This document shows, piece after piece, positions 438 to 38,780 of a stretch of DNA of 64,000 nucleotides. Both the position numbers and the translations under genes were made by a program. Numbering within the stretch: the first letter of the stretch is position 1; each line of letters starts with the position of its first letter. The stretch is from positions 62,001-126,000 of the IMG/VR virus record IMGVR_UViG_3300023202_000383. One strand, written 5' to 3'. The notes beneath the pieces were generated by a model. That model saw nothing but the letters and a program-made list of their open reading frames with translations, was not told the DNA's origin and ran no database searches.

Positions 438-1324
438 ATGAGATTGGGCTATTTATATTCTGTGACTCTCATGGAAGCCGACCTCATGGTCGGATTTGGT
501 CCACAAATCCAAAAAACATCCAAAGAACTAGGATTGCTCCAGAAGAGTTAGCTGGGTTTATTCAATCAATAAAAGATGAAACAAAAGTATATATCCCATG
601 GCTTATCAAACAGATTTCTCCATCAAAAGCGGGCAGTCAAAGATTGCGTCTTCCAGAAGACATACCAAGAATAATCAATGTCTTGCGGTCATTTAATAAA
701 TTAAAGACCAAACTGCCACATAAAGACATCAATAAATACACTTTTAGAGATTTAGAAGCGCAAGTAGATAAATTGAGCGGTACCGCTATAAAATCTAAAC
801 GCCAAAAAGCGAAAGATATAAAAGCTGAAGGAGTAGAGGATTACAGGGAAAATGCTTCATGGAAGATAATTAAAGTGACTACCGCTAAAGCAGCTTGTAT
901 TTTGTCTAAGAACACTAAGTGGTGCACAAGCGATGAAGGTGTAGCGGCAGGATATCTCCCGCTATATATCGTGTTTAAGAAAAGTGGCAGCAAGTTGATC
1001 AAAGTTGCACAGTATGATGCTGATTTTGATCAGGTTATGGATGTAAAAGATAATCCGATAGATCAAGTACCAAAATCATTGGCTGAATTGATGAAACCTC
1101 AATCGCCTAGTCCTGAACAAGCATATCGCTATGCTAAAGATGTCATCAAGGGAAGATGGCCCGATGGAGAAGAAACGATAAAGAAAGATCCTAAATGGGC
1201 TTATCACTATGCTCTCGATGTCATCAAGGGAAGATGGCCTGAGGCTGAGGAAACGATAAAGAATGATCCTGAATGGGCTTATCACTATGCTCTCGATGTC
1301 ATCAAGGGAAGATGGCCTGAGTGA
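438..1324 (+). CDS. Phage protein with KWCTS motif and C-terminal 26-aa AYxYAxDVIKGRWP repeats; apparent frameshift near 530
   Basis: ORF 644..1324 stays open back to 437 with no ATG; the ATG 438 ORF in another frame joins plausibly at KELG/IAPEELAG; three C-terminal repeats. Confidence 0.55.
1111..1321 (+). repeat. 78-bp tandem coding repeat, about 2.7 copies
   Basis: TGTCATCAAGGGAAGATGGCC occurs at 1141, 1219 and 1297; copies 2 and 3 are near-identical. Confidence 0.9.
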
Positions 1325-1348: not shown

Positions 1349-3016
1349 TTACTTACTCCAGATAAATTTGAAATGGCCAGCGTCCCATAATCTGCGATAT
1401 CTATTATTGAACATATTTTCAGATTCAGTAAGAGACGGATCGAAATTATCTAATTTGTCCAATAATTTATGTTTTTGAAATTGATGTCTATTAAAGACCA
1501 TATTGTCTTTGACATAACAATATCCAGGCTGTGTTATTGAATCAAGTTTGAATCCCAGTGCTTTATATAAATTTCCAGCAGAGAATCTTCTGTCGCAGTA
1601 TGTCATTATTGTTTTTGGGCCATGCGATCTGGTAAAATGTCTAAGCAATTTACTTGCGCCGCCAATAACGTTGTTGTTTATTTTGTTGGCAAATCTTGAT
1701 ACTTCCCATTCGTATTTTTTGTGTTTGTTGAATCCCATACAACAAACGATTTCATTATCATATGTAAGAGCATATTTAACCCTTGAATTTATATGTCCTT
1801 GCATATGGTTGGTGCTCATAAAATCACTGAAGTTGTTATTGTCGAGTTCTACAATGTCACATTTTCTGGCATATATCTTGTTACTCAACCCCATCTTGTT
1901 TTTTATTATCGACTTGATTATGTCAGTTTTGTCTTTCCATTCGTTCTCATAGATTTGATATACTAGATAGTTATTGCTAAGAGCTAGATCCGCTTTATAA
2001 TAATGTCTATATTTTTCATCTTTAGTCTCTTTTTTGTTAAATGAATGCCAATATATTCCATGCATTTCTATTCCAAAGTCACCGGCATTACAGTCTACTT
2101 CATATGGGCTAATTATTGTTCTATCATTTATTATTACTTCACGATATTGTTCAATGAATTCAATAATTTCTCTCTGTGGATTTGTCATGTTGGCAGAACA
2201 TTTAGAGCATCCGCCTTTAGAAACCATCAATCTATTTGGAGTTGTTCTAAATTCACCATGTAATTTGCATTTTATAATTATTTCATTTTTATCGCCAATG
2301 TATTCAGACAATACTTTATAATGATCTTTATATATTTCTCGTATTTGGTCTACGAATTTATTATGGTTCTTTTTCTTAGCTTCATTTGCACAATCAACAC
2401 AACCATGTCCGCGTAAGTGATTTTCAGCTATTTGCTTGAATTCACCGTGGGTCGGACATTTTATTTTAATTATTGATTTTCTTCCGTTCTTTAATATAAC
2501 ACTGTTATAATCGTATTTGTCACTATGGATTCTACGTGCCTTTTCGATGAATTTATCAGTGGTCAACATCAATTTTGCATTGCCGCATTTTGAGCATCCT
2601 TTGCCTTTTAAATGATTGGCTGGTCTTTGTCTAAAGGTATAATTGTGTTCCTTGCATTTTATTATTGCGAATACACCACTTACTGTCTTTTTATTTGTGT
2701 ATCCAAGATATTCGTATTTATCGCCGTGTATTTTCTTCGAATCGGCAACAAAACTATCGAAGTTTCTTCTGAGCGAATTAATAATTTTATGGCCCGATTT
2801 TTCATATATTAGACGATTTCTCTTTTTATAATCTATATACTGCATTCCTTCTTTTGATGATCTGGTTTGTATATTGTGTTTTTTGAGTTTTAATGATACT
2901 AATTTTCCAGACCTGCCCACTGATTTTCCGATTTCTGATTGGCTTTTGTGTTGTATTATGTACTGATCATATAGCCAATCATAATCATCTAATTTTTGTG
3001 GATTTAGTTTACTCAT
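1349..3016 (-). CDS. Free-standing Hef-like homing endonuclease (HTH + CxxHG/CxxC zinc modules + Vsr/DUF559-type nuclease + GNAT-like C-terminal domain)
   Basis: Repeated HxDKYDY..IKCPxHGEF..HLxGxGCxxC modules; EVD..GIEMHGIYWHS nuclease motif; C-terminal IYARKC..EVSRFA..GGASKL..TYCDRR..RRLWDAG; AT-rich. Confidence 0.8.
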   Translation of the reverse strand: MSKLNPQKLDDYDWLYDQYIIQHKSQSEIGKSVGRSGKLVSLKLKKHNIQTRSSKEGMQYIDYKKRNRLIYEKSGHKIINSLRRNFDSFVADSKKIHGDKYEYLGYTNKKTVSGVFAIIKCKEHNYTFRQRPANHLKGKGCSKCGNAKLMLTTDKFIEKARRIHSDKYDYNSVILKNGRKSIIKIKCPTHGEFKQIAENHLRGHGCVDCANEAKKKNHNKFVDQIREIYKDHYKVLSEYIGDKNEIIIKCKLHGEFRTTPNRLMVSKGGCSKCSANMTNPQREIIEFIEQYREVIINDRTIISPYEVDCNAGDFGIEMHGIYWHSFNKKETKDEKYRHYYKADLALSNNYLVYQIYENEWKDKTDIIKSIIKNKMGLSNKIYARKCDIVELDNNNFSDFMSTNHMQGHINSRVKYALTYDNEIVCCMGFNKHKKYEWEVSRFANKINNNVIGGASKLLRHFTRSHGPKTIMTYCDRRFSAGNLYKALGFKLDSITQPGYCYVKDNMVFNRHQFQKHKLLDKLDNFDPSLTESENMFNNRYRRLWDAGHFKFIWSK

Positions 3017-3969: not shown

Positions 3970-4209
3970 ATGAAATTGAAGAATTTACATGAATCTGGTG
4001 ATTCTTTGATCCTTTTAAAGGACAAAGTTGAACGCATGAGATCAAGCACATTACACAAGATTGAGCAAGAAATAGAATTATTAGAAATCGGGTTACATGC
4101 ATTAAATAAAAATAAGCCGCATGTAACGGTAGATCATATGGAAAGATCTATTGATGCACTCAAAAAGCTTGCGGGATATCTAAACACATGGTGGGATACT
4201 AATTTATAA
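3970..4209 (+). CDS. Small helical hypothetical protein (MKLKNLHES...)
   Basis: 79-aa ORF in the operon orientation; MKLxxLxE N-terminus. Confidence 0.6.
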   Translation: MKLKNLHESGDSLILLKDKVERMRSSTLHKIEQEIELLEIGLHALNKNKPHVTVDHMERSIDALKKLAGYLNTWWDTNL

Positions 4210-4251
4210 TCAAAATATGATTGCCAATCATATTGCGGGCAAATATGATGT

Positions 4252-5262
4252 ATGAAACCAGCCAATTTTGTTGATATAGATATTAAAAAACTCAAAAAGT
4301 TCTTTCGGACCCATACATTAGGCCAATGTGCGAAAGAATTCGGCTGCTCCAGTGCAACAATAAAGCGTAAACTGAAAGCAGCCGGTGTTGATACTTCTAT
4401 CCACAACAATAGCAGATTAGCTAAAGACTTATTCAAGAAATCCAAAAAAGATACATCATTTCTGACCGAGAATTTTTTGTATGATCAATATATAATCCAG
4501 AATAAAGATTCTAAGACAATAGCTGAAGAAAACAAGTTACATTATAATACTGTGCGCAATAGGATACAGAAATATGGTTTAAAGAAATCAGCAAAAAATG
4601 TGTCAGCATCTATGATGGTTAGGCATTATGAAAAAACTGGATATATGCATCCAGGTCAGAGACCAGATGTAATAAATAAGATCAATAAAAGAAGATCAAG
4701 ATATTATTATAAACCAGCTAAATCTAGTAAAAATTGTTTATTTAAATCGCTGCATGAATTATGTTACGCATTACTTTTAGACAATGATGACGATGTTGAA
4801 TCGTGGGATTATGAATTAATAAAGATCCCATATATTGATAGATTGACTGGCAGGCACAGGATGTATTATGTCGATTTCTCCGTTCAGGCTAAATCGGGCG
4901 ATAGATGGGTTGAGGTTAAGCCAGCTGAGAATATGATTCCGCACGACAAATATTTATATGCGTCCCAAGCCGCAAAACAAGCTGGGATTATGTTTAGGGG
5001 GCTCATAGGGGATGAAAAAAGTCGGGGATATGAACTATTTAAATCTGGATATATGAAAGATAACATTGAATTTAGGAATATTAAAGATATAAAAAATGAC
5101 AAGAATTATACTCTATGGTTCAAAAATATCAATGAAGTAGGTAAAATAAAACACGACCACTATGTTTACAAAGAAGAGGTTGGGCCGTATGTCAGAGTCA
5201 AGCTTAAAGCAAAAGCCAAGAATAAGTCTGGCACCTCTAACACATATCAATGCTATAACTGA
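4252..5262 (+). CDS. HTH-containing TnsA-N/PD-(D/E)XK free-standing endonuclease
   Basis: Two HTH-like segments; FKSLHE..WDYE..IPY..YYVDF..WVEVKP nuclease motif. Confidence 0.75.
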   Translation: MKPANFVDIDIKKLKKFFRTHTLGQCAKEFGCSSATIKRKLKAAGVDTSIHNNSRLAKDLFKKSKKDTSFLTENFLYDQYIIQNKDSKTIAEENKLHYNTVRNRIQKYGLKKSAKNVSASMMVRHYEKTGYMHPGQRPDVINKINKRRSRYYYKPAKSSKNCLFKSLHELCYALLLDNDDDVESWDYELIKIPYIDRLTGRHRMYYVDFSVQAKSGDRWVEVKPAENMIPHDKYLYASQAAKQAGIMFRGLIGDEKSRGYELFKSGYMKDNIEFRNIKDIKNDKNYTLWFKNINEVGKIKHDHYVYKEEVGPYVRVKLKAKAKNKSGTSNTYQCYN

Positions 5263-5902
5263 CACGAAGACCAGTCAGATATTTCTATCTCACAAAGCGT
5301 TTGTTAGTAAAAAATGTAATGATATTCTAGTCGACGAGCTTGCCCATTTGGTATCTGGAGATGCTAGCCATGGCGAAGAATGGCAGGATTGCTGCAATAA
5401 TTTATATGATTCTGTACCAACACACAATCCAGAATTTGATGGATTAAAAAGAAGATTGGGGATACCAGAATATATCGGGGCGAACATCGGGAATATTACT
5501 GGAATTCAGAATGTATTGACCGATTATCATCTTCTACAGCAGTATAGACGATTTTCCCAGAAAATTTTGGGAACAGAGGGCCATTGGGAAGTGCTCGGAG
5601 ACAATAGAATTAGATTATATCCAACTCCCAGGGGCACATTCCCGGTAGTAGTGTTATATGTGCCCGTGATAACCAGATTCAGGTCACCTCAAGCGAGATT
5701 GCTAGCCATGGATATGCTTGTGGCTGAATCTAAGATAATGCTTGGAAATGCTAGGGCGAAATTTAGTTCAATTCCGTCGCCTGATGGTGGGTCGCTAACT
5801 CTTGATGGTGATACTCTTCGCCAGCAGGGCGAAGAGGAACGCGAGAAAATCGTTGAGAAGGCTAATCTTCTTGCGGAGCCTCTTCCTGTACTAAAATGGT
5901 AA
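5189..5902 (+). CDS. Neck protein (gp13-like) C-terminal fragment preceded by a zincin/SprT-like domain
   Basis: GAGGT RBS before ATG 5189; DELAH..SHGEEW motif (5333-5383); from 5483 IRLYPTP..KIMLGNARAKFSSIPSPDGGSLTLDGDTLRQQGEEE matches a gp13-like C-terminus. Confidence 0.75.
   Translation: MSESSLKQKPRISLAPLTHINAITDTKTSQIFLSHKAFVSKKCNDILVDELAHLVSGDASHGEEWQDCCNNLYDSVPTHNPEFDGLKRRLGIPEYIGANIGNITGIQNVLTDYHLLQQYRRFSQKILGTEGHWEVLGDNRIRLYPTPRGTFPVVVLYVPVITRFRSPQARLLAMDMLVAESKIMLGNARAKFSSIPSPDGGSLTLDGDTLRQQGEEEREKIVEKANLLAEPLPVLKW
5863..5900. repeat. 38-bp direct repeat, left copy
   Basis: TAATCTTCTTGCGGAGCCTCTTCCTGTACTAAAATGGT, identical to 7620-7657. Confidence 0.95.
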
Positions 5903-5936
5903 TTATTTTAGCTGAATAATTACTATACTTATAAAA

Positions 5937-7622
5937 ATGAAAGTTGCAGATATAAATGAGCAGGCGTTAGTTGATGATTATAAATCTGGCGCATCTCTCA
6001 GAGATCTTGCCAATAAGTATGGTGCCAGCAGACCAACAATAAAAAAGAGGTTGTTAAAAAATGGTATAGGTATATTGTCATCTACTGACTATATTGCGAA
6101 GTACAATAAGAAGCACAGAGATAAATCTAACAAAAAGAATCGTCAGGGTATTGTGAAAAATCAGGTAGAATATGTAGATATTAATAGAACCACTGGGGAG
6201 TTTGTTGAGCAAGCGGCATCTATTCATAATAGTAGATATGACTATTCGTTAGTAGATTATAAGACTGCTGACGATAAAGTAATTATAATATGTCCTATTC
6301 ATAATAAATTTAGACAAACTCCGCATAGCCATTTAAAAGGCCATGGTTGCCCAAATTGCGGCAGAGAGGCTGGTATTAGCAAGAGATCTATCAAATTTAA
6401 TGAATTTCTTAATAGAGCTGTAGAAAAGCATGGAAATAAATTTAGATATATTGAAGATAGCTATAATGGGCTGAATTGTGATATAACAATCATATGTCAA
6501 GAACACGGGGAATATAATCAGAATGCAAGACAACATTTGTATGGCAGGCAATGCCCTCGATGTGCTGGCGGAGGATATATATCGACAACTAATGAATTCA
6601 TAAGCAAGGCCGTTGAGGTTCATGGCGGCAAATTTGATTATAGCCGCGTTGAATATTCAAACAATAAAACTCCAGTTACAATAGTTTGTCCAGTGCACGG
6701 CGAATTTATGCAGAAGCCGAATGGTCATTTGAATGGCCATGGGTGCTTGATGTGTGCTAGAGATGCGACTTCTTCTGCTGCAGAGTTTGAAATAGTTGAA
6801 TTTCTTAACTCAATTGGCATTAATAGTATTCAACATTCCCGGAGCATCATACCACCCCTTGAATTGGATATTTTTGTTCCTGATTTTAATGTAGCTATAG
6901 AATATAATGGCATATATTGGCATTCATTTGGTAATTTGGAGGAAGAAGATAAATATTCGCATTGCTGCAAATTAGATCGTTGCAAAAAACTTGGAGTCAG
7001 ACTAATCCAGATTTTCGAAAATGAGTGGATATATAAAAAAGATATAGTAAAATCGATGCTAGTGTACTTATTCAATAAAAGTAATAACAAGATTTATGCT
7101 AGAAATTGCGATATTAAAGAGATATCTACATCTCAATATAAAAAATTTACTGATGCTAATCATATGCAAGGATATAGGGCCGCTGCCGCGAGGTATGGTT
7201 TATTTGATGGGGATGAACTTGTTGCTATAGGATCATTTAATAAATATGGTAGTAGAGATTATTGGGAAGTTATCAGATTCGCCAATAAATTGAATCACCA
7301 TGTTGTCGGTGGTTTTTCTAAGATATTGAAACATTTTATAAGAAATGACAAACCTAGTAAAATTGTAACATATGCTGATAGAAGATATTCAGACGGCTCA
7401 TTATATAACAAATGTGGTTTTAAATATATATCGACTACTGATCCAAATTACTATTATGTCAATGGACTAGAAGTGAATAGCCGCCAAAAATTTCAAAAAC
7501 ATAAGCTTAAAGATAAATTGCGCGAGTTTGATAAAAATTTGACGGAAGCGGAAAATATGTTTAATAATGGGTACCGTAGATTATGGGATGCTGGCAATCT
7601 TAAATACCAGTTTCTTATTTAA
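5937..7622 (+). CDS. Hef-like homing endonuclease with GNAT-like C-terminal domain
   Basis: HTH, three HxxxY/FDY..CPxHG..GCPxC modules, ELDIF..AIEYNGIYWHS, and the same C-terminal domain as 1349..3016. Confidence 0.8.
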   Translation: MKVADINEQALVDDYKSGASLRDLANKYGASRPTIKKRLLKNGIGILSSTDYIAKYNKKHRDKSNKKNRQGIVKNQVEYVDINRTTGEFVEQAASIHNSRYDYSLVDYKTADDKVIIICPIHNKFRQTPHSHLKGHGCPNCGREAGISKRSIKFNEFLNRAVEKHGNKFRYIEDSYNGLNCDITIICQEHGEYNQNARQHLYGRQCPRCAGGGYISTTNEFISKAVEVHGGKFDYSRVEYSNNKTPVTIVCPVHGEFMQKPNGHLNGHGCLMCARDATSSAAEFEIVEFLNSIGINSIQHSRSIIPPLELDIFVPDFNVAIEYNGIYWHSFGNLEEEDKYSHCCKLDRCKKLGVRLIQIFENEWIYKKDIVKSMLVYLFNKSNNKIYARNCDIKEISTSQYKKFTDANHMQGYRAAAARYGLFDGDELVAIGSFNKYGSRDYWEVIRFANKLNHHVVGGFSKILKHFIRNDKPSKIVTYADRRYSDGSLYNKCGFKYISTTDPNYYYVNGLEVNSRQKFQKHKLKDKLREFDKNLTEAENMFNNGYRRLWDAGNLKYQFLI

Positions 7623-8182
7623 TCTTCTTGCGGAGCCTCTTCCTGTACTAAAATGGTGACTTGCGACTTTATGGCATCTACGATGTCGCCAATAAGCGTG
7701 CCTTCGTAAGTCTTGCCTGCCTCTATCTTTTTGAGTGTTCTATGATGAGATGTTATGATAGTGCTGTGGTTGGATCTGTTGAGAAGCTTAGTTAGCTCTG
7801 GATAACTGAATCTCAACAGATCCCTTGCGGCGCATATTATAATATCTCTTGTTGTAGTGACTGCTCTTACTCTAGACTTACTAAGAACCTTTCTTTTGTC
7901 AACATTCATTATCTCGCAACCGATTCTAAGCACATCGTCGAATGTTGGTGCACGCGATAGCGTACCGTGGGTTGGTTTACTTGGTCTGTCGGTTTTGATG
8001 ATTGGCTTGCCTTCGGCTTCTTCAGCTCTTTTCCTAGATATAAAATATTCTAGGTTAAATTCAGGTTTTTTCCTTTCCGGCGGCGGCGTTGGCCATCCGT
8101 TTTCAACATCTGATTCATATAGCATCTGCTCTAGCTCTTCTTCGGTATATAATTCTGTTCTGTCCATGTAAACGTTGTTCAT
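7619..8182 (-). CDS. DnaA domain IV (Bac_DnaA_C)-like DNA-binding protein
   Basis: VLSKSRVRAVTTTRDIIICAARDLLRFSYPELTKLLNRSNHSTII parallels the DnaA C-terminal S..R.R.....RQIAMYL.R....S...IG..F.RDHTTV pattern. Confidence 0.65.
   Translation of the reverse strand: MNNVYMDRTELYTEEELEQMLYESDVENGWPTPPPERKKPEFNLEYFISRKRAEEAEGKPIIKTDRPSKPTHGTLSRAPTFDDVLRIGCEIMNVDKRKVLSKSRVRAVTTTRDIIICAARDLLRFSYPELTKLLNRSNHSTIITSHHRTLKKIEAGKTYEGTLIGDIVDAIKSQVTILVQEEAPQED
7620..7657. repeat. 38-bp direct repeat, right copy
   Basis: Identical to 5863-5900; the pair brackets the endonuclease gene. Confidence 0.95.
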
Positions 8183-8221
8183 GTTTTAGCGTCATATAAA
8201 AATTATCAAACATAAATTAGA

Positions 8222-8710
8222 ATGTCTTTTGAAACCATAAAAACCGAGCACCGGATCAACGTAATTAGCGGCAACAAGATACTTGTGCCTGGTTGTGAGC
8301 CGCAATCTACTATAAGCTCAACCACTCTTGCCAAAGAGCAGCAAGAAGATGGGATATGCAATGGGGCATTAGTTGATTTAGATGATGCATTAGATGCCAT
8401 ACCAGGATCTAGAGTCATCCTGGGTATGAATTGGGGGAACTTAGGGACACAGAAATTCTTTGTATTGCCGCCCGTTGATAATTCGTTATGTTGCAGGGGG
8501 TCGATAGCTTTGGAAGATTACTATGCTGTGCTTAGAGGATTGCCGTCTGCAGAGACAGAGCAAGATTTAGAGAATATAGTTGATAATTGCGATAGCTTTA
8601 ACAACTATCAGTGCGATGGATCTATTTTAGAAAGAACATTTGACGATCCAAGAGCATTAAATAGGACTGAATTGCCGCCCGCCAGCCAATCTCGTGGGAG
8701 GTGCATATGA
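8222..8710 (+). CDS. Hypothetical virion-module protein
   Basis: ORF preceded by CAAACATA motif; coupled to the next gene. Confidence 0.6.
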   Translation: MSFETIKTEHRINVISGNKILVPGCEPQSTISSTTLAKEQQEDGICNGALVDLDDALDAIPGSRVILGMNWGNLGTQKFFVLPPVDNSLCCRGSIALEDYYAVLRGLPSAETEQDLENIVDNCDSFNNYQCDGSILERTFDDPRALNRTELPPASQSRGRCI

Positions 8711-9279
8711 TACATAGATTTAGTCAAGTAAATGACAAAGCCAATGATGTTGCTGCTGGTCAAAAGCAGCCGTCATTTAGAAGTGATGTGTCTCAGGAAA
8801 ATCCTTTGATCCAGCTCCATGATCCTGATAGCCCCGATATGGCTTATGCTGCTAGGGTCGCCAAGGAAATAATCAGAATAAGTGGTGCGCATGTCATTGT
8901 TTATACAAGGACCCACAATAATGACGTTGATGACGTGTGGGAAGAGGACGCCAATCCAACATACAGAGCTGGTAAGCATTACAAAGCGTTCTTTGTGCCT
9001 GAGCCCATAAAAACAGAGCTTACTAGGTTTGGCAGCGATACTGAAAATAATGTCGAGATTGTGTTTGACAGGGAGCAGATATATCAAGACTTCGGTGACA
9101 GAATGCTGCATGCTGGGGATATTATTGAGGTCCCATACAATTCGGCATTTCACAGGCTGGGCAAGTTCAGGATACTAAATGCCAGGGATTCGGGTAATTT
9201 CAGATATAAGTTCCTTTACTTTACGTGCGAGTGCCAGAACATTACTGACGACATTACTATCAATATAGATCATCAATGA
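8707..9279 (+). CDS. Neck protein / head closure (gp14-like)
   Basis: Position between the gp13-like and gp15-like genes; VWEED..LTRFG..GDIIEVPY pattern. Confidence 0.6.
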   Translation: MIHRFSQVNDKANDVAAGQKQPSFRSDVSQENPLIQLHDPDSPDMAYAARVAKEIIRISGAHVIVYTRTHNNDVDDVWEEDANPTYRAGKHYKAFFVPEPIKTELTRFGSDTENNVEIVFDREQIYQDFGDRMLHAGDIIEVPYNSAFHRLGKFRILNARDSGNFRYKFLYFTCECQNITDDITINIDHQ

Positions 9280-9509
9280 TTAAAGGCGATGCTAATTTTG
9301 AATTTGATGCAGACAAGTTAACCGAAATGGTTAATGGTATTGTTGATGAATATGTCGATAAATTAAACGAGGAAATACAGATCAAGAACCCTGGATCAGC
9401 TGAAACGGAAGTAAATAGAGAGAAAAGAATTATAAAAATTTATGATGATACTCCTGAAGGATCGGGAGACAAAATCATACAATCAACTAAAGATATTTTG
9501 GGCTTATAA
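9276..9509 (+). CDS. Small hypothetical protein
   Basis: Translationally coupled ORF (ATGA/TAATG overlaps). Confidence 0.55.
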   Translation: MIKGDANFEFDADKLTEMVNGIVDEYVDKLNEEIQIKNPGSAETEVNREKRIIKIYDDTPEGSGDKIIQSTKDILGL

Positions 9510-13535: not shown

Positions 13536-15374
13536 ATGATATTATGGGATAAAACTGAAATTAAATTTGGTACCAATAAAGATACTACCCGTAAACAGGA
13601 TAGTGTAATCGTAAAATGTGAAGCTTGTGATAGTGAGCTTATTAGGTCATATGTATCTGTTAAGAATACCATAAAACGTTCTGGTAAATATAACTGCCAT
13701 AGTTGTGCTACTAAGAACAATAAATTTATAGATGGATGCTCCAAGAGAGCATCTTCTAAATGGCAGGACCCAGAATACAGAAATAATAATTTAGCTGCAG
13801 TCAGGTCTGATGAGTACAGAGAAAAAAAGAGGAAAAGTTCCATTGAGAAATGGCAGGACCCAGAATATAGGAAGAAGCACTTATCTGAAGAAGCAATCAA
13901 GAAACGGTCAGTAAATTCAAGCAATGCAGCAAAAAAGAAATGGCAGGACCCAGAATATAGGAAGAAATTAAAAACTGTGTTGTCAGACAGAGCAAAAAGT
14001 CAGTGGGCTGATGATTCGTACAGAAGCAACATGTCAGCAATTCAATCTACTAATGCAAAGAAAGCATGGGCCAAAAAACGTGATAAATTCTTAGAAACAT
14101 TCAGATCAAATCGTTTTAGAGAATTAATGCGATCTATATCTTCAAGTCAATCAGACGCCACTAAGAAGCGCATAAGTCTAGCATCAAAAGAGTTATGGGA
14201 TAATGAATTATATAAGAACAGAATGATAAAAGTTCTATTCTCTCCAGAGATAAAACAAAAACGTGCAAAGGCAATAAAATTAAAAAAAGAAAGCGAAGAA
14301 TACAAGCATAAACTGGAGAAACGTAGATTATCAGCAGAACGCAATTTTAAAATTGCGGCATCGGAATTGAATCCAGAATATGATTACTCTTCCGTAGATT
14401 ATACAAATAGTAAAGATAAAGTTGAAATTATCTGTAATCTCCATGGGTCGTTTTGGCAAACCCCCAACAACCATACTTCTAAATTAAATAGGTGCCCAGC
14501 TTGTGCAAGTAATCAATCTAGATTACATCTTAATATAGAAAATTATATAAATTCAATCGGATATAAGACCATAACCAATGACAGGAGAGTTATCAAACCG
14601 TATGAATTAGATATAATGATATCTGATGCTGCTATTGGTATAGAAGTTGATGGGCTGTATTGGCATTCATATAATAAAATAGAAACTTCTGAGGAGAGAA
14701 AAAGACATAGCAATAAGGTTGATATGGCATCAGCAGCAGGAATTAGGTTGATTTGTATACGAGAGGACGAATGGAATAATAAATGTGATATTGTAAAATC
14801 TAGACTGCGTAATATATTGGGGTTGTCTAATAGAATTTATGCTAGAAAATGCAAAATAGTAGAAGTTGATAATAGTGCATACAAACAATTTGTTGAATCA
14901 ACACATTTGCAAGGATATAGAAGTGCATCCAGAATTTATGGTCTTGAATATGATAATGAATTAGTTAGTGTGATGTCATTCAATCCATATCGACCATCAA
15001 AGGCCGATAACCATTGGGAAATCATGAGGTTTTCAACGGCTTTAGATACAGTTGTGATTGGGGGTGCATCTAGATTATTTACAAAATTTATTAAGGACGT
15101 AGATCCAAAATATGTTCTATCATATGCTGATAGGCGATATGCTACTGGCAATGTATATTTTAAAATAGGTTTGGATTTTTCTGGGATAACGAGACCAAAT
15201 TATGTCTATGTGAAGAATGGTATGACATATTCAAGACAGAACTTCCAAAAACATAAGCTTCCAGACAAGTTAAACAATTATGATCCACGACTGACCGAAG
15301 CCGAAAATATGTTTAATAATGGATATCGTAGACTATGGGATGCTGGCAACTTTAAATTCATTTACAGGCGTTAA
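13536..15374 (+). CDS. Hef-like homing endonuclease with zinc ribbon, KWQDPEYR helical repeats and GNAT-like C-terminal domain
   Basis: CEAC/CHSC; repeats at 13758, 13848 and 13938 (90-bp period); ELDI..GIEVDGLYWHS; RRLWDAG end. Confidence 0.8.
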   Translation: MILWDKTEIKFGTNKDTTRKQDSVIVKCEACDSELIRSYVSVKNTIKRSGKYNCHSCATKNNKFIDGCSKRASSKWQDPEYRNNNLAAVRSDEYREKKRKSSIEKWQDPEYRKKHLSEEAIKKRSVNSSNAAKKKWQDPEYRKKLKTVLSDRAKSQWADDSYRSNMSAIQSTNAKKAWAKKRDKFLETFRSNRFRELMRSISSSQSDATKKRISLASKELWDNELYKNRMIKVLFSPEIKQKRAKAIKLKKESEEYKHKLEKRRLSAERNFKIAASELNPEYDYSSVDYTNSKDKVEIICNLHGSFWQTPNNHTSKLNRCPACASNQSRLHLNIENYINSIGYKTITNDRRVIKPYELDIMISDAAIGIEVDGLYWHSYNKIETSEERKRHSNKVDMASAAGIRLICIREDEWNNKCDIVKSRLRNILGLSNRIYARKCKIVEVDNSAYKQFVESTHLQGYRSASRIYGLEYDNELVSVMSFNPYRPSKADNHWEIMRFSTALDTVVIGGASRLFTKFIKDVDPKYVLSYADRRYATGNVYFKIGLDFSGITRPNYVYVKNGMTYSRQNFQKHKLPDKLNNYDPRLTEAENMFNNGYRRLWDAGNFKFIYRR

Positions 15375-17370: not shown

Positions 17371-18333
17371 ATGCCTCCGCAAGAAAATGAAATTCCGCTA
17401 GATAATCAACCAGCCGAAGACGTTCAAGGCGTTCAAGGCGTTCAAGGCGTTCAAGGCGTTCAAGGACCTAAAACGACTGATGCACAGGGCCCAGAAAAAT
17501 CTGAGGCTCATAATTTAATAGACCAAATCATCCATATGGGGTCGAAGGACTTACTGCCTTGGGAAGAGGTGGTGCTTCCAAGTCTTGGCCTCTATTATAA
17601 TGATAGAATCCCTGACGGTAAGGTTGCTGTCAGAGCAATGGATGTGCATGTAGAGAAAATCTTAGCGAATACGCGATTGGTTCAATCTGGTCATGCTATA
17701 GAACATTTGTTTGCTAGATGTGTGCAATTGCCAGAGGGTGTCGATGCATTGAGTTTGCTGGTTAGTGACAGGACATTTTTGTTATATGTGATACGCGGAA
17801 TTACGTACGGCAACAAATATGAATTCCTTGCAACGTGCGGAGATTGCGGTCAATCATCGACATTTCTTTATGACATCAATAAGATGTCAGAGACGATAAA
17901 GCAAGCAAACCCGGATCTTGGCAAGGAGCCGTTCAAGGTTCCTTTGCCCATGCTTAGTAAGAAATTCGATAAGGATGTGTGGGTTGGCGTTAGATTTGCT
18001 AGGGGCAGAGATGCGTTCGAGCTTATGGAACGCAAGAAAATGAACAGAAGAATTGGGACTTCTGTTGGTGAAATGTCTGCTGAAGAGAATGATGATGTCA
18101 CTGAGAATTTAGCAGTACTTATACAAAACTTCATGGGTGAAACAATAGGCCCAGATAAGATTAGGGCATTTGTTGATACTTTGCATGCATCCGATTCGTC
18201 TACTATAAGAGAATTCATTAGGAAAAATGAGCCGGGCATTGACTCTACTGTCAACCTACAGTGCCCGGTATGCGACTCTTCTCTTAGAATTGCTTTGCCG
18301 ATTACTGAAACCTTTTTTCGTCGGGCGGGATAG
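17371..18333 (+). CDS. Baseplate hub assembly chaperone (gp26-like)
   Basis: VLPSLG..EKIL..DRTFLL..RGITYG..CGDCG..CPVC..FF C-terminus. Confidence 0.75.
   Translation: MPPQENEIPLDNQPAEDVQGVQGVQGVQGVQGPKTTDAQGPEKSEAHNLIDQIIHMGSKDLLPWEEVVLPSLGLYYNDRIPDGKVAVRAMDVHVEKILANTRLVQSGHAIEHLFARCVQLPEGVDALSLLVSDRTFLLYVIRGITYGNKYEFLATCGDCGQSSTFLYDINKMSETIKQANPDLGKEPFKVPLPMLSKKFDKDVWVGVRFARGRDAFELMERKKMNRRIGTSVGEMSAEENDDVTENLAVLIQNFMGETIGPDKIRAFVDTLHASDSSTIREFIRKNEPGIDSTVNLQCPVCDSSLRIALPITETFFRRAG
17421..17465 (+). repeat. 9-bp tandem repeat x5 (VQG)
   Basis: CGTTCAAGG x5. Confidence 0.95.
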
Positions 18334-37529: not shown

Positions 37530-38780
37530 ATGGAGAATTTTACTATGGATAGGTATGATCCGAAACTTATCGCTGAGCAGATGGATTTTGAACCAGAAGA
37601 TGTCGATGTCGATGTGAATGACGTCCCTTCTGACGTCCCTTCTGACGTCCCTTCTGACGTCCCTTCTGATGTCGCTGGCGATATGGATTATGATGCGCCT
37701 GATGACTATGATGTTCATGATGAAGGCGAAGATGAAGGCCCAGTTGTTCATCTTACAAGAGAGCTTTTAAAACAGCTAGTCCAGGAAGTCATGGAATTAG
37801 AACTTGGCGACTGGGTTGGCGACAGAGATCTCGCCAGTGAATTAGCAGACAAGGCCGAAGAGCTTTGTTGCGGCGATGAAGATGAAGCGGTCGATTTGAC
37901 CACTGAACATCTTGATGACCTTAAATCTGTCTTGTCGCCAGGAGATGAAGACGAAGATGAAGACGAAGATGGGGGCGAAGCTGGTGATGGTGGCGAAGAG
38001 GGCGACGAAGCTAGTGATGATGAGGGCGAAGATGACGGCGGCGATGATGAAGATTATGAAGACGACATGAAGAAGGGTGACTATGATAAGGACCCCCATG
38101 CTGCAGCCCTAGGCGGCAAGGGCGATGAGGAGGATCCACATGCCGCAGCATTAGGGCGAAAAGAAGATAAGGACGAGCAGGGCAACCCAATCCAGGAGAT
38201 GGCTGATTCCATGTGTGCTATTCCTGGGTGCCCGCATGAGTGTGCATGTAAGCAATGCTGCTGCTGCGAATCACATTGCGAATGTTTAGAGCAGGTTGGT
38301 CCTGGTGCTGAGATGATGGCTGGCGATTATGAAGAGGCGGACATGGAGGCTCATTGTGCTGCCGGTGATTATGAAAAAGATGAGGAGAGATATAGCGAGT
38401 CTCATAAGAAGCTCATCGGTCGCAACAAAGAAGTTGTGGAAGAGGACAAGAAAGAGGCCAAGCCTGAACCAAGAATCAAGCCACTAACTGAAAGTGGTAA
38501 AATTCGTCATATCATATCAGAGAGCGTTTCTAAAGTCGTCAAAAACATATCTGAATCGTACGATATGAAGTTTGAAGACACTAAAAATCCAGACATTGTA
38601 AAAATAGTGTCTGAGCACAAAGAATCTCAGCTTAAGTTAATCGAAGAGAATATCAACCTTGTTCTTGAAAGCAAGAGCTGGCTCATGAGTCGGGATGCAG
38701 AAAAGCTTATTGGATACAATAAATGCAGCCTTATCAAGCCAGAGAAGGCTAAGCATTATTACTTGTTGTTCGATAAGTAA
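37530..38780 (+). CDS. Highly acidic low-complexity protein (probable prohead core/internal protein)
   Basis: D/E-rich; CAAAGATA upstream; Cys cluster; DPHAAALG x2. Confidence 0.6.
   Translation: MENFTMDRYDPKLIAEQMDFEPEDVDVDVNDVPSDVPSDVPSDVPSDVAGDMDYDAPDDYDVHDEGEDEGPVVHLTRELLKQLVQEVMELELGDWVGDRDLASELADKAEELCCGDEDEAVDLTTEHLDDLKSVLSPGDEDEDEDEDGGEAGDGGEEGDEASDDEGEDDGGDDEDYEDDMKKGDYDKDPHAAALGGKGDEEDPHAAALGRKEDKDEQGNPIQEMADSMCAIPGCPHECACKQCCCCESHCECLEQVGPGAEMMAGDYEEADMEAHCAAGDYEKDEERYSESHKKLIGRNKEVVEEDKKEAKPEPRIKPLTESGKIRHIISESVSKVVKNISESYDMKFEDTKNPDIVKIVSEHKESQLKLIEENINLVLESKSWLMSRDAEKLIGYNKCSLIKPEKAKHYYLLFDK
37619..37666 (+). repeat. 12-bp tandem repeat x4 (DVPS)
   Basis: TGACGTCCCTTC x4. Confidence 0.95.

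What the first reader, a model, noticed from the sequence alone, without database searches (positions are those of the whole stretch)
5863..7657. Endonuclease gene bracketed by a perfect 38-bp duplication that preserves two overlapping convergent genes
Seen: identical 38-mers flank the Hef-like gene. The repeat encodes the neck C-terminus (NLLAEPLPVLKW) on plus and the DnaA-like C-terminus (TILVQEEAPQED) on minus, and both copies still have stops in both frames. Inference: the ancestral genes overlapped tail to tail, and a recent insertion duplicated the overlap so both survived. The duplication is much longer than IS-type target duplications and allows precise excision by recombination.
Basis: partly seen in the sequence, partly recalled or inferred. 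Interest (0 to 1): 0.62.

Follow-up and report, generated by a model that had tools for sequence, protein, structure and literature searches.

The report
Nuclease gene insertion duplicating a gene overlap
A selfish homing-endonuclease gene has landed exactly in the 41-base stretch where two convergent genes of a jumbo phage overlapped, and a perfect 38-base duplication of that stretch lets both genes keep their ends; it is a tidy but not revolutionary example of how such elements colonise densely packed genomes.

Summary
Identical 38-mers lie at 5863-5900 and 7620-7657. They are the only dispersed exact repeat of 24 bp or more in the 256.5-kb phage record. Between them lies an intact 561-aa Hef-like homing endonuclease gene with zinc-finger repeats, a Vsr/EDxHD-fold nuclease core and a Mom-like GNAT-fold domain.

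Copy 1 is the family-conserved C-terminus of the T4 gp13-like neck gene. Copy 2, read antisense, gives the last 12 codons of a standalone DnaA-domain-IV gene. Both stop codons are rebuilt at the junctions (TGA to TAA, TAG to TAA). Deleting one repeat plus the insert in silico restores both proteins unchanged.

The nuclease gene is AT-rich (31-35 % GC) against about 41 % for its neighbours and the genome. It has six paralogues in the genome, none with a flanking duplication. A separately assembled strain with 4 SNPs in 12 kb has the same structure, so it is not an assembly artefact.

No empty-site relative or read exists in the data I could reach. Relatives at about 57 % identity lack both the nuclease gene and the DnaA-like gene. 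The closest analogue is the C-terminal duplication left by mobile endonuclease ORFs in fungal mitochondria. I rate it a new variant of a known kind, of moderate interest.

The parts
5162..5902 (+). T4 gp13-like neck protein gene (246 aa from the ATG at 5162; gene callers used a 184-aa form starting at 5348). Its last 12 codons lie in repeat copy 1, and its TAA stop is built from the last T of the repeat plus the first AA of the insert.
   Evidence: PF26809 Phage_T4_gp13 is on record for the identical product and most homologues. Synteny with gp15 (PF16724) and the sheath gene supports it. The C-terminus is conserved across the family.
5863..5900 (.). Repeat copy 1, the functional 3' end of gp13. 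In the minus frame it is followed by TAG (5864-5862).
5901..5936 (+). 36-nt leader of the nuclease cassette. It is AT-rich, has a 7-bp AT hairpin (5901-5907 / 5915-5921) and no Shine-Dalgarno sequence, and TATAAAAATG abuts the start codon.
   Evidence: Read directly. No terminator-like site is predicted here.
5937..7622 (+). Free-standing Hef-like homing endonuclease gene (561 aa, P0001). It has an N-terminal HTH (aa ~11-38), three treble-clef zinc-finger modules (DUF723/DUF4379, aa ~95-265), a Vsr/EDxHD-fold nuclease core (aa ~280-380, nt ~6774-7076, invariant D311, E322, H329) and a Mom-like GNAT-fold domain (aa ~385-561, nt ~7089-7619).
   Evidence: PHROG 559 E 2e-132 and PHROG 3339 E 3e-101. 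Pfam DUF723, DUF4379, Mom and HTH_28. AlphaFold2 model with pLDDT 93. Foldseek matches to 3r3p_B I-Bth0305I (TMt 0.78), 1cw0 Vsr and 8bv8 Mom. Invariant residues. Full length against paralogues. GC 31-35 %.
7620..7657 (.). Repeat copy 2, a duplicated gp13 3' end. Antisense, it supplies the last 12 codons of the DnaA-domain-IV gene. Its first three bases, TAA, are the nuclease gene's stop codon. In the gp13 frame it is followed by TGA.
7619..8182 (-). Standalone DnaA domain IV (helix-turn-helix) gene, 187 aa (P0003). It is lineage-specific and converges on gp13 and the nuclease gene. Its TAA stop (7621-7619) shares a TTAA with the nuclease gene's stop.
   Evidence: PF08299 Bac_DnaA_C E 7e-11, above the gathering score. 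NCBIfam DnaA models match only their C-terminal ~90 positions. The only relatives are distant, 40 % identity or less over ~86 aa. Tail alignment. GC 41-42 %.
8222..8710 (+). Context: the gene that follows gp13 within 1-2 nt in relatives (the gp14 position). It marks the far edge of the lineage-specific insertion 5903-8221.

Best explanation
The window is part of a T4-like jumbo phage. In its recent ancestor the neck gene gp13 (plus strand) and a small accessory gene for a DnaA-domain-IV DNA-binding protein (minus strand) converged and overlapped by 41 nt, from stop codon to stop codon. A compact free-standing homing-endonuclease cassette of about 1.72 kb (a 36-nt leader plus the ORF, with no 3' tail) was then inserted into that overlap. 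The cassette belongs to a Hef-like family that is expanding in this genome. The join was most likely an illegitimate, microhomology-guided one: the nuclease gene's own TAA, and perhaps TAATCT.CTT, matches the target. It behaved like an unequal crossover, so 38 nt of the overlap ended up on both sides of the insert. Copy 1 keeps gp13 intact and copy 2 keeps the DnaA-like gene intact. Both stop codons were re-formed by insert bases, so neither host protein changed by a single residue. The duplication is not a mechanistic footprint of the nuclease. It is the one configuration that lets an insertion into an ORF overlap be neutral. Its near-minimal length is what selection for compactness, and against long unstable repeats, would leave. 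Once resident, the gene would spread like other free-standing phage homing-endonuclease genes: it cuts a nuclease-free genome near the site during co-infection and is copied in by break repair. Recombination between the two 38-mers would excise it precisely. Shown: the repeat, the gene identities, the fold, the compositional contrast, the exact restoration on in-silico excision, and the absence of duplications at the paralogues. Inferred: the ancestral overlap, the order of events, the joining mechanism, selection, homing activity and excision.
For: The repeat is unique and perfect. The 38-mer encodes the conserved gp13 C-terminus. Copy 2 is therefore a displaced gp13 end lying in frame as the tail of P0003. 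The nuclease ORF ends at the same alignment column as its three closest paralogues, and its stop is the first 3 nt of copy 2. The paralogue at window 1349-3016 ends TAATCTaCTT, against TAATCTTCTT here. The nuclease gene has 31-35 % GC against 41-42 % for P0003 and 41 % for the genome. In-silico deletion of 5901-7657 gives identical gp13 and P0003 proteins with TGA and TAG stops. Without copy 2 the P0003 tail would change, and without copy 1 gp13 would lose its conserved end. None of the six other Hef-type genes in the genome, nor the one in relative L027, has a flanking repeat above shuffled expectation. Relatives have gp13 followed directly by the next structural gene. The gp13 neighbourhood is a hot spot: L027 has a Hef-like gene upstream of gp13 and L025 has two small convergent overlapping ORFs downstream. 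The structure is the same in a separately assembled contig from another sample that differs by 4 SNPs. Unitig depth of the 38-mer is about twice that of the insert and flank (34.2 vs 15.6 and 15.3). The catalytic core is intact, with invariant D/E/H residues and a Vsr/EDxHD fold.
Against: No empty site has been seen. P0003 occurs only on the three near-identical contigs. The available run data are k=31 contigs, which cannot distinguish empty from filled sites because the repeat is longer than k. The nearest relatives lack P0003 too, so the order of the two insertions is inferred from composition and geometry only. The microhomology argument rests on one paralogue and could be chance. The duplication matches the ORF overlap to within 1 and 2 nt. 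That is more exact than a single random event predicts and needs selection or later trimming to explain. The endonuclease's activity and target are untested.
Confidence: 0.68

Rival explanations
1. A cassette that carries a gene end, as in the mobile endonuclease ORFs (mORFs) of fungal mitochondria. The mobile unit would be [last 38 nt of gp13 + stop + leader + nuclease ORF]. The enzyme would cut inside the conserved 3' coding end of gp13 in nuclease-free genomes, and repair would copy the unit in. gp13 would then get a replacement C-terminus (copy 1) and the native end (copy 2) would be pushed downstream, where it survives only because the convergent gene needs it.
For: The architecture host gene - C-terminus - endonuclease ORF - native C-terminus is the one described for Allomyces atp6 and for Glomus atp6, atp9, cox2 and nad3 (PMC3630166). 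The duplicated segment is the most conserved part of the gp13 end, the kind of sequence homing enzymes prefer. The gp13 flanks attract such genes in relatives. EDxHD enzymes have long footprints of about 60 bp (PMC3239194).
Against: The two copies are 100 % identical, whereas the imported and native ends in the fungal cases are diverged (63.5 % identity for Glomus atp6). No homologue of the nuclease closer than 48 % identity exists, and none was seen downstream of a gp13 gene. The six paralogues carry no duplicated host gene end. An intact target would persist at copy 1 unless the recognition site spans a repeat edge.
Confidence: 0.14
2. A single composite insertion. The nuclease gene and the DnaA-domain-IV gene arrived together as one convergent two-gene cassette between gp13 and the next structural gene, and the internal 38-mer is a by-product of that event.
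For: All relatives examined lack both genes, and gp13 there abuts the next gene. Nuclease genes often sit at the boundaries of exchanged modules in phages (PMC10448857).
Against: A gp13 3' fragment lies between the two genes, in frame as the tail of P0003. That requires P0003 to have been next to a gp13 end before the nuclease gene separated them. GC content differs sharply between the two genes. P0003 matches the genome's composition.
Confidence: 0.1
3. A mechanistic target-site duplication. The enzyme or a partner makes nicks about 38 nt apart on opposite strands, and fill-in after insertion duplicates the stretch between them, as with transposons.
For: The nuclease core has the fold of Vsr, which is a nicking enzyme. 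The duplication is flush with the insert on both sides.
Against: None of seven other Hef-type genes examined has any flanking duplication. Homing endonucleases spread by break repair, not by cut-and-paste with staggered cuts (established knowledge; PMC3239194). No terminal inverted repeats or transposase are present.
Confidence: 0.04
4. An assembly artefact. The repeat or the insert was created by mis-joining of reads.
For: Short repeats break k=31 graphs at this place.
Against: The same structure is seen in the 332-kb contig and in a 12.2-kb contig from a different sample that differs by 4 SNPs. Three runs hold the insert at the same depth as the flank, and the 38-mer unitig at about double depth. 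The insert is an intact conserved ORF, and both junctions keep two host ORFs open. A 38-nt repeat is shorter than a read.
Confidence: 0.02

Closest known systems
Free-standing homing endonuclease genes of T4-like phages (seg and mob genes; Hef of phage U5; Hef-like genes of Campylobacter phages)
   Same: A free-standing nuclease ORF sits between genes of a T4-like structural module. It is AT-rich, lacks a good ribosome-binding site, is multi-copy in the genome and absent from relatives. Profile matches go to Hef-type families, and DNA matches to genes annotated as Hef-like.
   Different: Those genes are described as sitting in intergenic spaces or as splitting genes. I know of no described case, and found none in five literature searches, in which the insertion lies in an ORF overlap and is flanked by a duplication that keeps both ORFs whole. 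Direct homology to U5 Hef itself was not tested.
EDxHD homing endonuclease family (I-Bth0305I; Vsr-like fold)
   Same: The nuclease core of the model superposes on the I-Bth0305I catalytic domain (3r3p_B, TMt 0.78, rmsd 3.1 A, 22 % identity) and on Vsr (1cw0). The acidic and histidine residues are invariant in 71 homologues.
   Different: I-Bth0305I is encoded in a group I intron, and its nuclease domain is C-terminal (PMC3239194). Here the gene is free-standing, and the core is flanked by three zinc-finger modules on one side and a Mom-like GNAT-fold domain on the other.
Mobile endonuclease ORFs (mORFs) of fungal mitochondria with carboxy-terminal duplication (Allomyces macrogynus atp6; Glomus atp6, atp9, cox2, nad3)
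   Same: The layout is the same: host gene core, a C-terminal coding segment, the endonuclease ORF, then a second copy of the C-terminal segment. The host gene stays functional despite an insertion into its coding end (PMC3630166).
   Different: This is a phage, not an organelle. The nuclease is Hef/EDxHD-type, not LAGLIDADG or GIY-YIG. The copies are identical rather than diverged, so there is no sign of a foreign origin. The downstream copy is not a dead remnant but the coding end of a second, convergent gene.
Target-site duplications of insertion sequences and transposons
   Same: Direct repeats of host sequence lie flush with both ends of an inserted mobile gene.
   Different: At 38 bp it is several times longer than typical IS duplications (general knowledge). 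There are no terminal inverted repeats and no transposase. Sister copies of the same gene family have no duplication.

Membership tests
Free-standing phage homing endonuclease gene (Hef-like) | Sequence membership in Hef-type nuclease families | tested here: met
   PHROG 559 'HNH endonuclease' E 2e-132 over aa 60-558, and PHROG 3339 'homing endonuclease' E 3e-101. blastn hits fall in Campylobacter-phage genes annotated as Hef or Hef-like. More than 3,300 homologues exist.
Free-standing phage homing endonuclease gene (Hef-like) | Patchy presence: present here, absent at the same site in relatives, and multi-copy in the genome | tested here: met
   It is absent between gp13 and the next gene in L015-L018, L022-L025 and L027. 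Six further paralogues plus fragments occur in the genome.
Free-standing phage homing endonuclease gene (Hef-like) | Site-specific cleavage of the nuclease-free allele near the insertion site, and homing in co-infection | not testable with these tools
   This needs the enzyme and a host-phage system. No empty allele is available.
EDxHD / Vsr-like homing endonucleases | Vsr-like nuclease fold | tested here: met
   AlphaFold2 model of aa 265-561, pLDDT 93. Foldseek matches 3r3p_B (E 4.6e-4, TMt 0.78) and 1cw0_A Vsr (E 6.2e-4).
EDxHD / Vsr-like homing endonucleases | Conserved acidic and histidine catalytic residues | tested here: inconclusive
   D311, E322 and H329 are invariant and E309 nearly so in 71 sequences. 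Residue-by-residue equivalence to the EDxHD motif of I-Bth0305I was not checked.
mORF-type element carrying a replacement gene terminus | Duplicated C-terminal coding segment on both sides of the endonuclease ORF | tested here: met
mORF-type element carrying a replacement gene terminus | The upstream copy is foreign (diverged from the native downstream copy) and travels with the ORF | tested here: not met
   The copies are 100 % identical. No related nuclease gene was found with a gp13 end attached.
Transposon / IS insertion | Transposase, terminal inverted repeats, and a duplication of family-typical length at every copy | tested here: not met
   No inverted repeats lie at the insert ends. 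No transposase domain was found. No duplication occurs at seven sister copies.
T4 gp13 neck protein (left-hand gene) | Family profile match and T4-like synteny | tested here: met
   PF26809 is on record for the identical product and its homologues. The gene is followed in order by gp15 (PF16724) and the sheath. My own Pfam scan gave no hit at E <= 0.01.
DnaA (right-hand gene) | AAA+ ATPase domain III plus DNA-binding domain IV | tested here: not met
   Only domain IV is present (PF08299, aa 82-147). DnaA equivalog models match only their last ~90 positions, far below cut-off. The protein is a standalone domain IV, not a DnaA.

The most novel reading that the evidence does not exclude
Duplicating a gene end may be a general third route by which free-standing homing endonuclease genes enter coding sequence in phages, beside hiding in introns or inteins and sitting in intergenic gaps. 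The element would target the conserved 3' end of an essential structural gene and bring, or create, a spare copy of that end. In that case the 38-bp repeats also act as a built-in precise-excision switch, which would make the insertion reversible in the population.
Probability: 0.2. Interest if true: 0.6.

Novelty: new variant of a known kind. Interest (0 to 1): 0.4.

Why it matters
How free-standing homing endonuclease genes reach new sites is the least understood step of their life cycle. Phage genomes leave almost no neutral space for them. This locus looks like a fresh insertion in which both junctions can still be read base by base. The element went into a 41-nt overlap of two genes, and a 38-bp duplication and two rebuilt stop codons made the insertion cost-free. 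That gives a concrete, testable picture of ectopic insertion: a microhomology join plus selection for intact neighbours. It also extends to a phage the C-terminal-duplication solution known from fungal mitochondrial endonuclease ORFs. For annotation, short perfect repeats flanking a nuclease gene can mark recent insertions and allow the pre-insertion sequence to be reconstructed. It remains one locus in an uncultured phage, with no experimental support.

Tried and rejected
**Searches for close relatives**
- Near-identity search of 4200-9300 against 50,697 phage records gave no match. Distant mode matched only inside the nuclease gene.
- Word-index protein search for the DnaA-like protein found only itself, on three near-identical contigs.
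- The exhaustive HMMER search found only distant domain-IV relatives. No relative therefore has that gene without the nuclease gene.

**Searches for the empty site**
- Exact scan of metagenome contigs for the 46-nt empty-site junction gave 0 hits.
- Exact scan for a 24-nt stretch just right of copy 2 gave 0 hits.
- The viral-contig scan with the 38-mer found only the known 12.2-kb filled contig.

**Sequencing runs**
- Only three runs of one study hold the locus, all as k=31 contigs. No joint was reported.
- An empty site would share every 31-mer with the filled genome, so this cannot show absence.
- Depth ratios were 34.2 / 15.6 / 15.3 in X1 and 29.2 / 16.7 / 20.3 in X2. They fit two copies per genome but are too noisy to detect a minority empty form.

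**Other tests**
- I tested whether the 196-aa minus-strand ORF at the same position in relative L025 is a homologue of the DnaA-like gene. It is not.
- I looked for exact and diverged flank duplications at the six other Hef-type genes and at the one in L027. There were none.
- I looked for a shared upstream or promoter motif among the paralogues. Nothing was convincing, and the promoter/terminator scan was at background.
- PDB sequence search with the nuclease gave nothing useful. The fold search was needed.
- The Sandegren et al. 2005 Hef paper is not held.
- Five literature searches found no phage precedent for this arrangement. This is not exhaustive.
- The assembly-artefact and transposon-type readings were considered and rejected (see rival explanations).
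Full report
**Where the window lies.** It is bases 62,001-126,000 of a 256,507-bp IMG/VR virus record. That record is 100 % identical over the tested 11.9 kb to a 332-kb metagenome contig. The region around the finding is a T4-like structural module. The order is a TnsA-N-like gene, a gp13-like neck gene, [the locus], three small genes, gp15, a small gene and the tail sheath. Genome GC is 41 %.

**Observation.** The perfect 38-mer TAATC...ATGGT lies at 5863-5900 and 7620-7657.
- It occurs exactly twice in the genome, even with three mismatches allowed.
- It is the only non-tandem exact repeat of 24 nt or more in 256 kb.
- Flank-to-flank local alignment scores 38, against 8.7 +/- 1.2 for shuffles.
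- Sequences just outside the repeat are unrelated on both sides, so the duplication is 38 nt and no longer.
- On the plus strand the repeat encodes NLLAEPLPVLKW, the end of ORF 5162-5902.
- On the minus strand it encodes TILVQEEAPQED, the end of ORF 7619-8182.

**The three genes.**
- The left gene is a T4 gp13-type neck protein. PF26809 is on record for the identical product and its homologues, and the synteny agrees.
- The right gene (P0003, 187 aa) has a DnaA domain IV helix-turn-helix at aa 82-147 (PF08299, E 7e-11, above the gathering score) and nothing else of DnaA.
- P0003 is lineage-specific. The word search finds only itself, on three near-identical contigs. An exhaustive HMMER search of 1.84 billion representatives gives only distant domain-IV matches, at best 40 % identity over 86 aa.
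- The middle gene (P0001, 561 aa, 5937-7622) matches PHROG 559 (E 2e-132) and PHROG 3339 'homing endonuclease'. Its DNA is the only part of the region that matches isolated phages, inside genes annotated as Hef or Hef-like in Campylobacter phages.
- Pfam sees an N-terminal HTH and DUF723/DUF4379 treble-clef zinc-finger modules.
- An AlphaFold2 model of aa 265-561, built on 70 homologues, has mean pLDDT 93.
- Foldseek splits that model into two parts. One is a core like the I-Bth0305I catalytic domain (3r3p_B, TMt 0.78, 22 % identity) and Vsr (1cw0). The other is a C-terminal GNAT fold closest to phage Mu Mom (8bv8).
- D311, E322 and H329 are invariant in the family.
- The nuclease is therefore of the Vsr/EDxHD kind defined by I-Bth0305I (PMC3239194), in a free-standing, multi-domain form.

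**Is the nuclease gene an insertion?** The evidence says yes.
- Its GC content is 31-35 %, like two paralogues in the window (1349-3016 and 13536-15374). gp13 and P0003 are at 41-42 %, like the genome.
- The genome holds three close and three distant paralogues, plus fragments.
- In every relative for which I could fetch context, gp13 is not followed by a nuclease gene. These are L015-L018 at about 57 % identity, and L022-L025 and L027.
- In most of those relatives the next gene's ATG comes 1-2 nt after the gp13 stop.
- The neighbourhood is nevertheless a hot spot. L027 has a full-length Hef-like gene (46 % identity) immediately upstream of gp13. L025 has two small ORFs after gp13 that converge and overlap by 35 nt.

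**Which gene owns the 38-mer?** gp13 does. The motif (E/D)xA-N/I-x-L-A/G-E-P-L/M-x-x-x-x-W/Y at the very C-terminus is conserved across about 120 homologues.
- Copy 2 is therefore a displaced gp13 end.
- It lies in frame as the last 12 codons of P0003. That is explained only if P0003 once abutted and overlapped the real gp13 end.
- The P0003 tail also lines up loosely with the last helix and acidic tail of standalone domain-IV homologues, so it may matter to that protein. That alignment is weak.

**Junction anatomy**.
- The nuclease ORF ends at the same alignment column as its closest paralogues, and its TAA stop is the first three bases of copy 2. The cassette therefore has no 3' tail.
- Its 5' leader is 36 nt.
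- The gp13 stop is TAA at copy 1 (T of the repeat plus AA of the insert). It would be TGA in the copy 2 context.
- The P0003 stop is TAA at copy 2 (its last base comes from the nuclease gene's final codon). It would be TAG in the copy 1 context.
- Deleting 5901-7657 in silico gives a site that encodes both proteins unchanged, overlapping by 41 nt from stop to stop.
- The duplication therefore equals the ancestral ORF overlap minus 1 nt on one side and 2 nt on the other, and those three positions have been replaced by bases that still give stops.
- Removing copy 2 alone would replace the P0003 tail. Removing copy 1 alone would remove the conserved gp13 end.

**Is the duplication a footprint of the enzyme?** No. 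None of the six other Hef-type genes of this genome, nor the one in L027, has a flanking direct repeat above shuffled expectation, whether exact or diverged. No terminal inverted repeats bound the insert.
- The likeliest origin is an illegitimate join at short homology.
- The cassette's TAA coincides with TAA in the target. The paralogue at 1349-3016 continues TAATCTaCTT after its stop, against TAATCTTCTT here, which hints at a longer microhomology. This is suggestive only.
- The near-minimal extent of the repeat then needs selection for intact neighbours. It also needs either selection against longer, less stable repeats or later trimming of non-coding surplus. These steps are inferred.

**Artefact?** This is unlikely.
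- A 12.2-kb contig from another sample (3300022719) differs from the window by 4 SNPs, one of them inside this nuclease gene, and has the same two copies and insert.
- Three runs of one study hold the locus.
- Their k=31 contigs break at the repeat, as expected. The 1,779-nt insert unitig has the depth of the right flank (15.6 vs 15.3 in X1), and the 38-nt unitig has about double that depth (34.2).

**What could not be done.** No empty site was found in contigs or proteins.
- Contigs at k=31 cannot reveal an empty site, because the repeat is longer than k. No raw reads were on offer.
- The ancestral state, the recency beyond '100 % identical', homing activity and excision therefore remain inferences.
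- The relatives available lack P0003 as well. That the DnaA-like gene arrived first and the nuclease gene second rests on composition and on the position of copy 2.

**Comparison with what is known.**
- The gene is an ordinary member of a very large Hef-like family, with more than 3,300 hits, and has a Vsr/EDxHD core.
- Free-standing nuclease genes in T4-like phages are well known. So are cases where they split genes (cited in PMC3322345).
- The closest structural analogue is the carboxy-terminal duplication left by mobile endonuclease ORFs in fungal mitochondrial genes (Allomyces atp6; Glomus atp6, atp9, cox2, nad3; PMC3630166).
- This locus differs from that analogue in four ways: the host (a phage), the nuclease family, the identity of the copies, and the use of the downstream copy as the coding end of a second, convergent gene.
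- I found no phage precedent in five full-text searches. Those searches are not exhaustive.

**Verdict.** It is a new variant of a known kind. Interest is moderate (0.4): a clean natural example of how a selfish nuclease gene can enter an ORF overlap at no cost, with a specific empty-site sequence to test.

Noticed in passing
window 7089-7619 (aa ~385-561 of the nuclease): The C-terminal third of the Hef-like endonuclease folds as a GNAT domain. Its closest match is phage Mu Mom, a DNA-modifying enzyme (8bv8, Foldseek E 1e-6; weak Pfam Mom hit). It is conserved across the family and follows the Vsr/EDxHD nuclease core. I do not know whether it binds DNA, modifies it or is a relic.
   Followed up: partly
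window 1349-3016 (-), 13536-15374 (+); genome 33699-35396 (-), 190439-191992 (+), 234334-236112 (-), 246911-248428 (+); fragments at genome 41614-41899: The genome carries three close (41-47 % identity) and three distant paralogues of the nuclease gene, plus broken fragments with an in-frame TAG. All that lie in the window are low in GC. This looks like a family caught between expansion and decay.
   Followed up: partly
window 4252-5262 (+): The gene just upstream of gp13 has a TnsA-like endonuclease N-terminal domain (PF08722, E 6e-9) and several weak HTH hits. It is conserved at this position in relatives (63 % identity in L015). It overlaps the long form of gp13 by about 100 nt here and about 86 nt in L015. 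In relative L027 a Hef-like gene sits at that position instead.
   Followed up: partly
window 7619-8182 (-): This standalone DnaA domain IV protein has no close relatives in 1.84 billion representatives. It sits antisense in a late structural operon. It might bind host DnaA boxes, but that is speculation.
   Followed up: partly
window 1139-1321 (genome 63139-63321): There are about three tandem copies of a 78-nt unit (50 nt exact) at the 3' end of ORF 644-1324, just before the convergent nuclease paralogue. The 12.2-kb contig from the other sample begins inside this array.
   Followed up: no
window 13758-13966 (genome 75758-75966): There are 90-nt-spaced repeats (31 nt exact) inside the N-terminal part of the nuclease paralogue 13536-15374. 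They encode repeated KWQDPEYRKK-type modules, which are probably repeated DNA-binding units.
   Followed up: no
window 37619-37657 (genome 99619-99657) and window 17421-17456 (genome 79421-79456): These are short in-frame tandem arrays, a 12-nt unit TGACGTCCCTTC and a 9-nt unit CGTTCAAGG, seen in the genome-wide repeat list.
   Followed up: no
L021:5751-5840: In one relative (a 170-kb contig) gp13 is followed directly by what looks like a tRNA gene on the opposite strand, and the gp14/gp15 block is inverted upstream. This is another sign that the gp13 3' flank is a rearrangement point.
   Followed up: no
window 5901-5921: A 7-bp all-AT hairpin (AATTATT / AATAATT, 7-nt loop) starts at the first base of the insert, directly after the gp13 stop. 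The nuclease gene has no Shine-Dalgarno sequence. This may keep its translation low, as in other phage homing-endonuclease genes.
   Followed up: no
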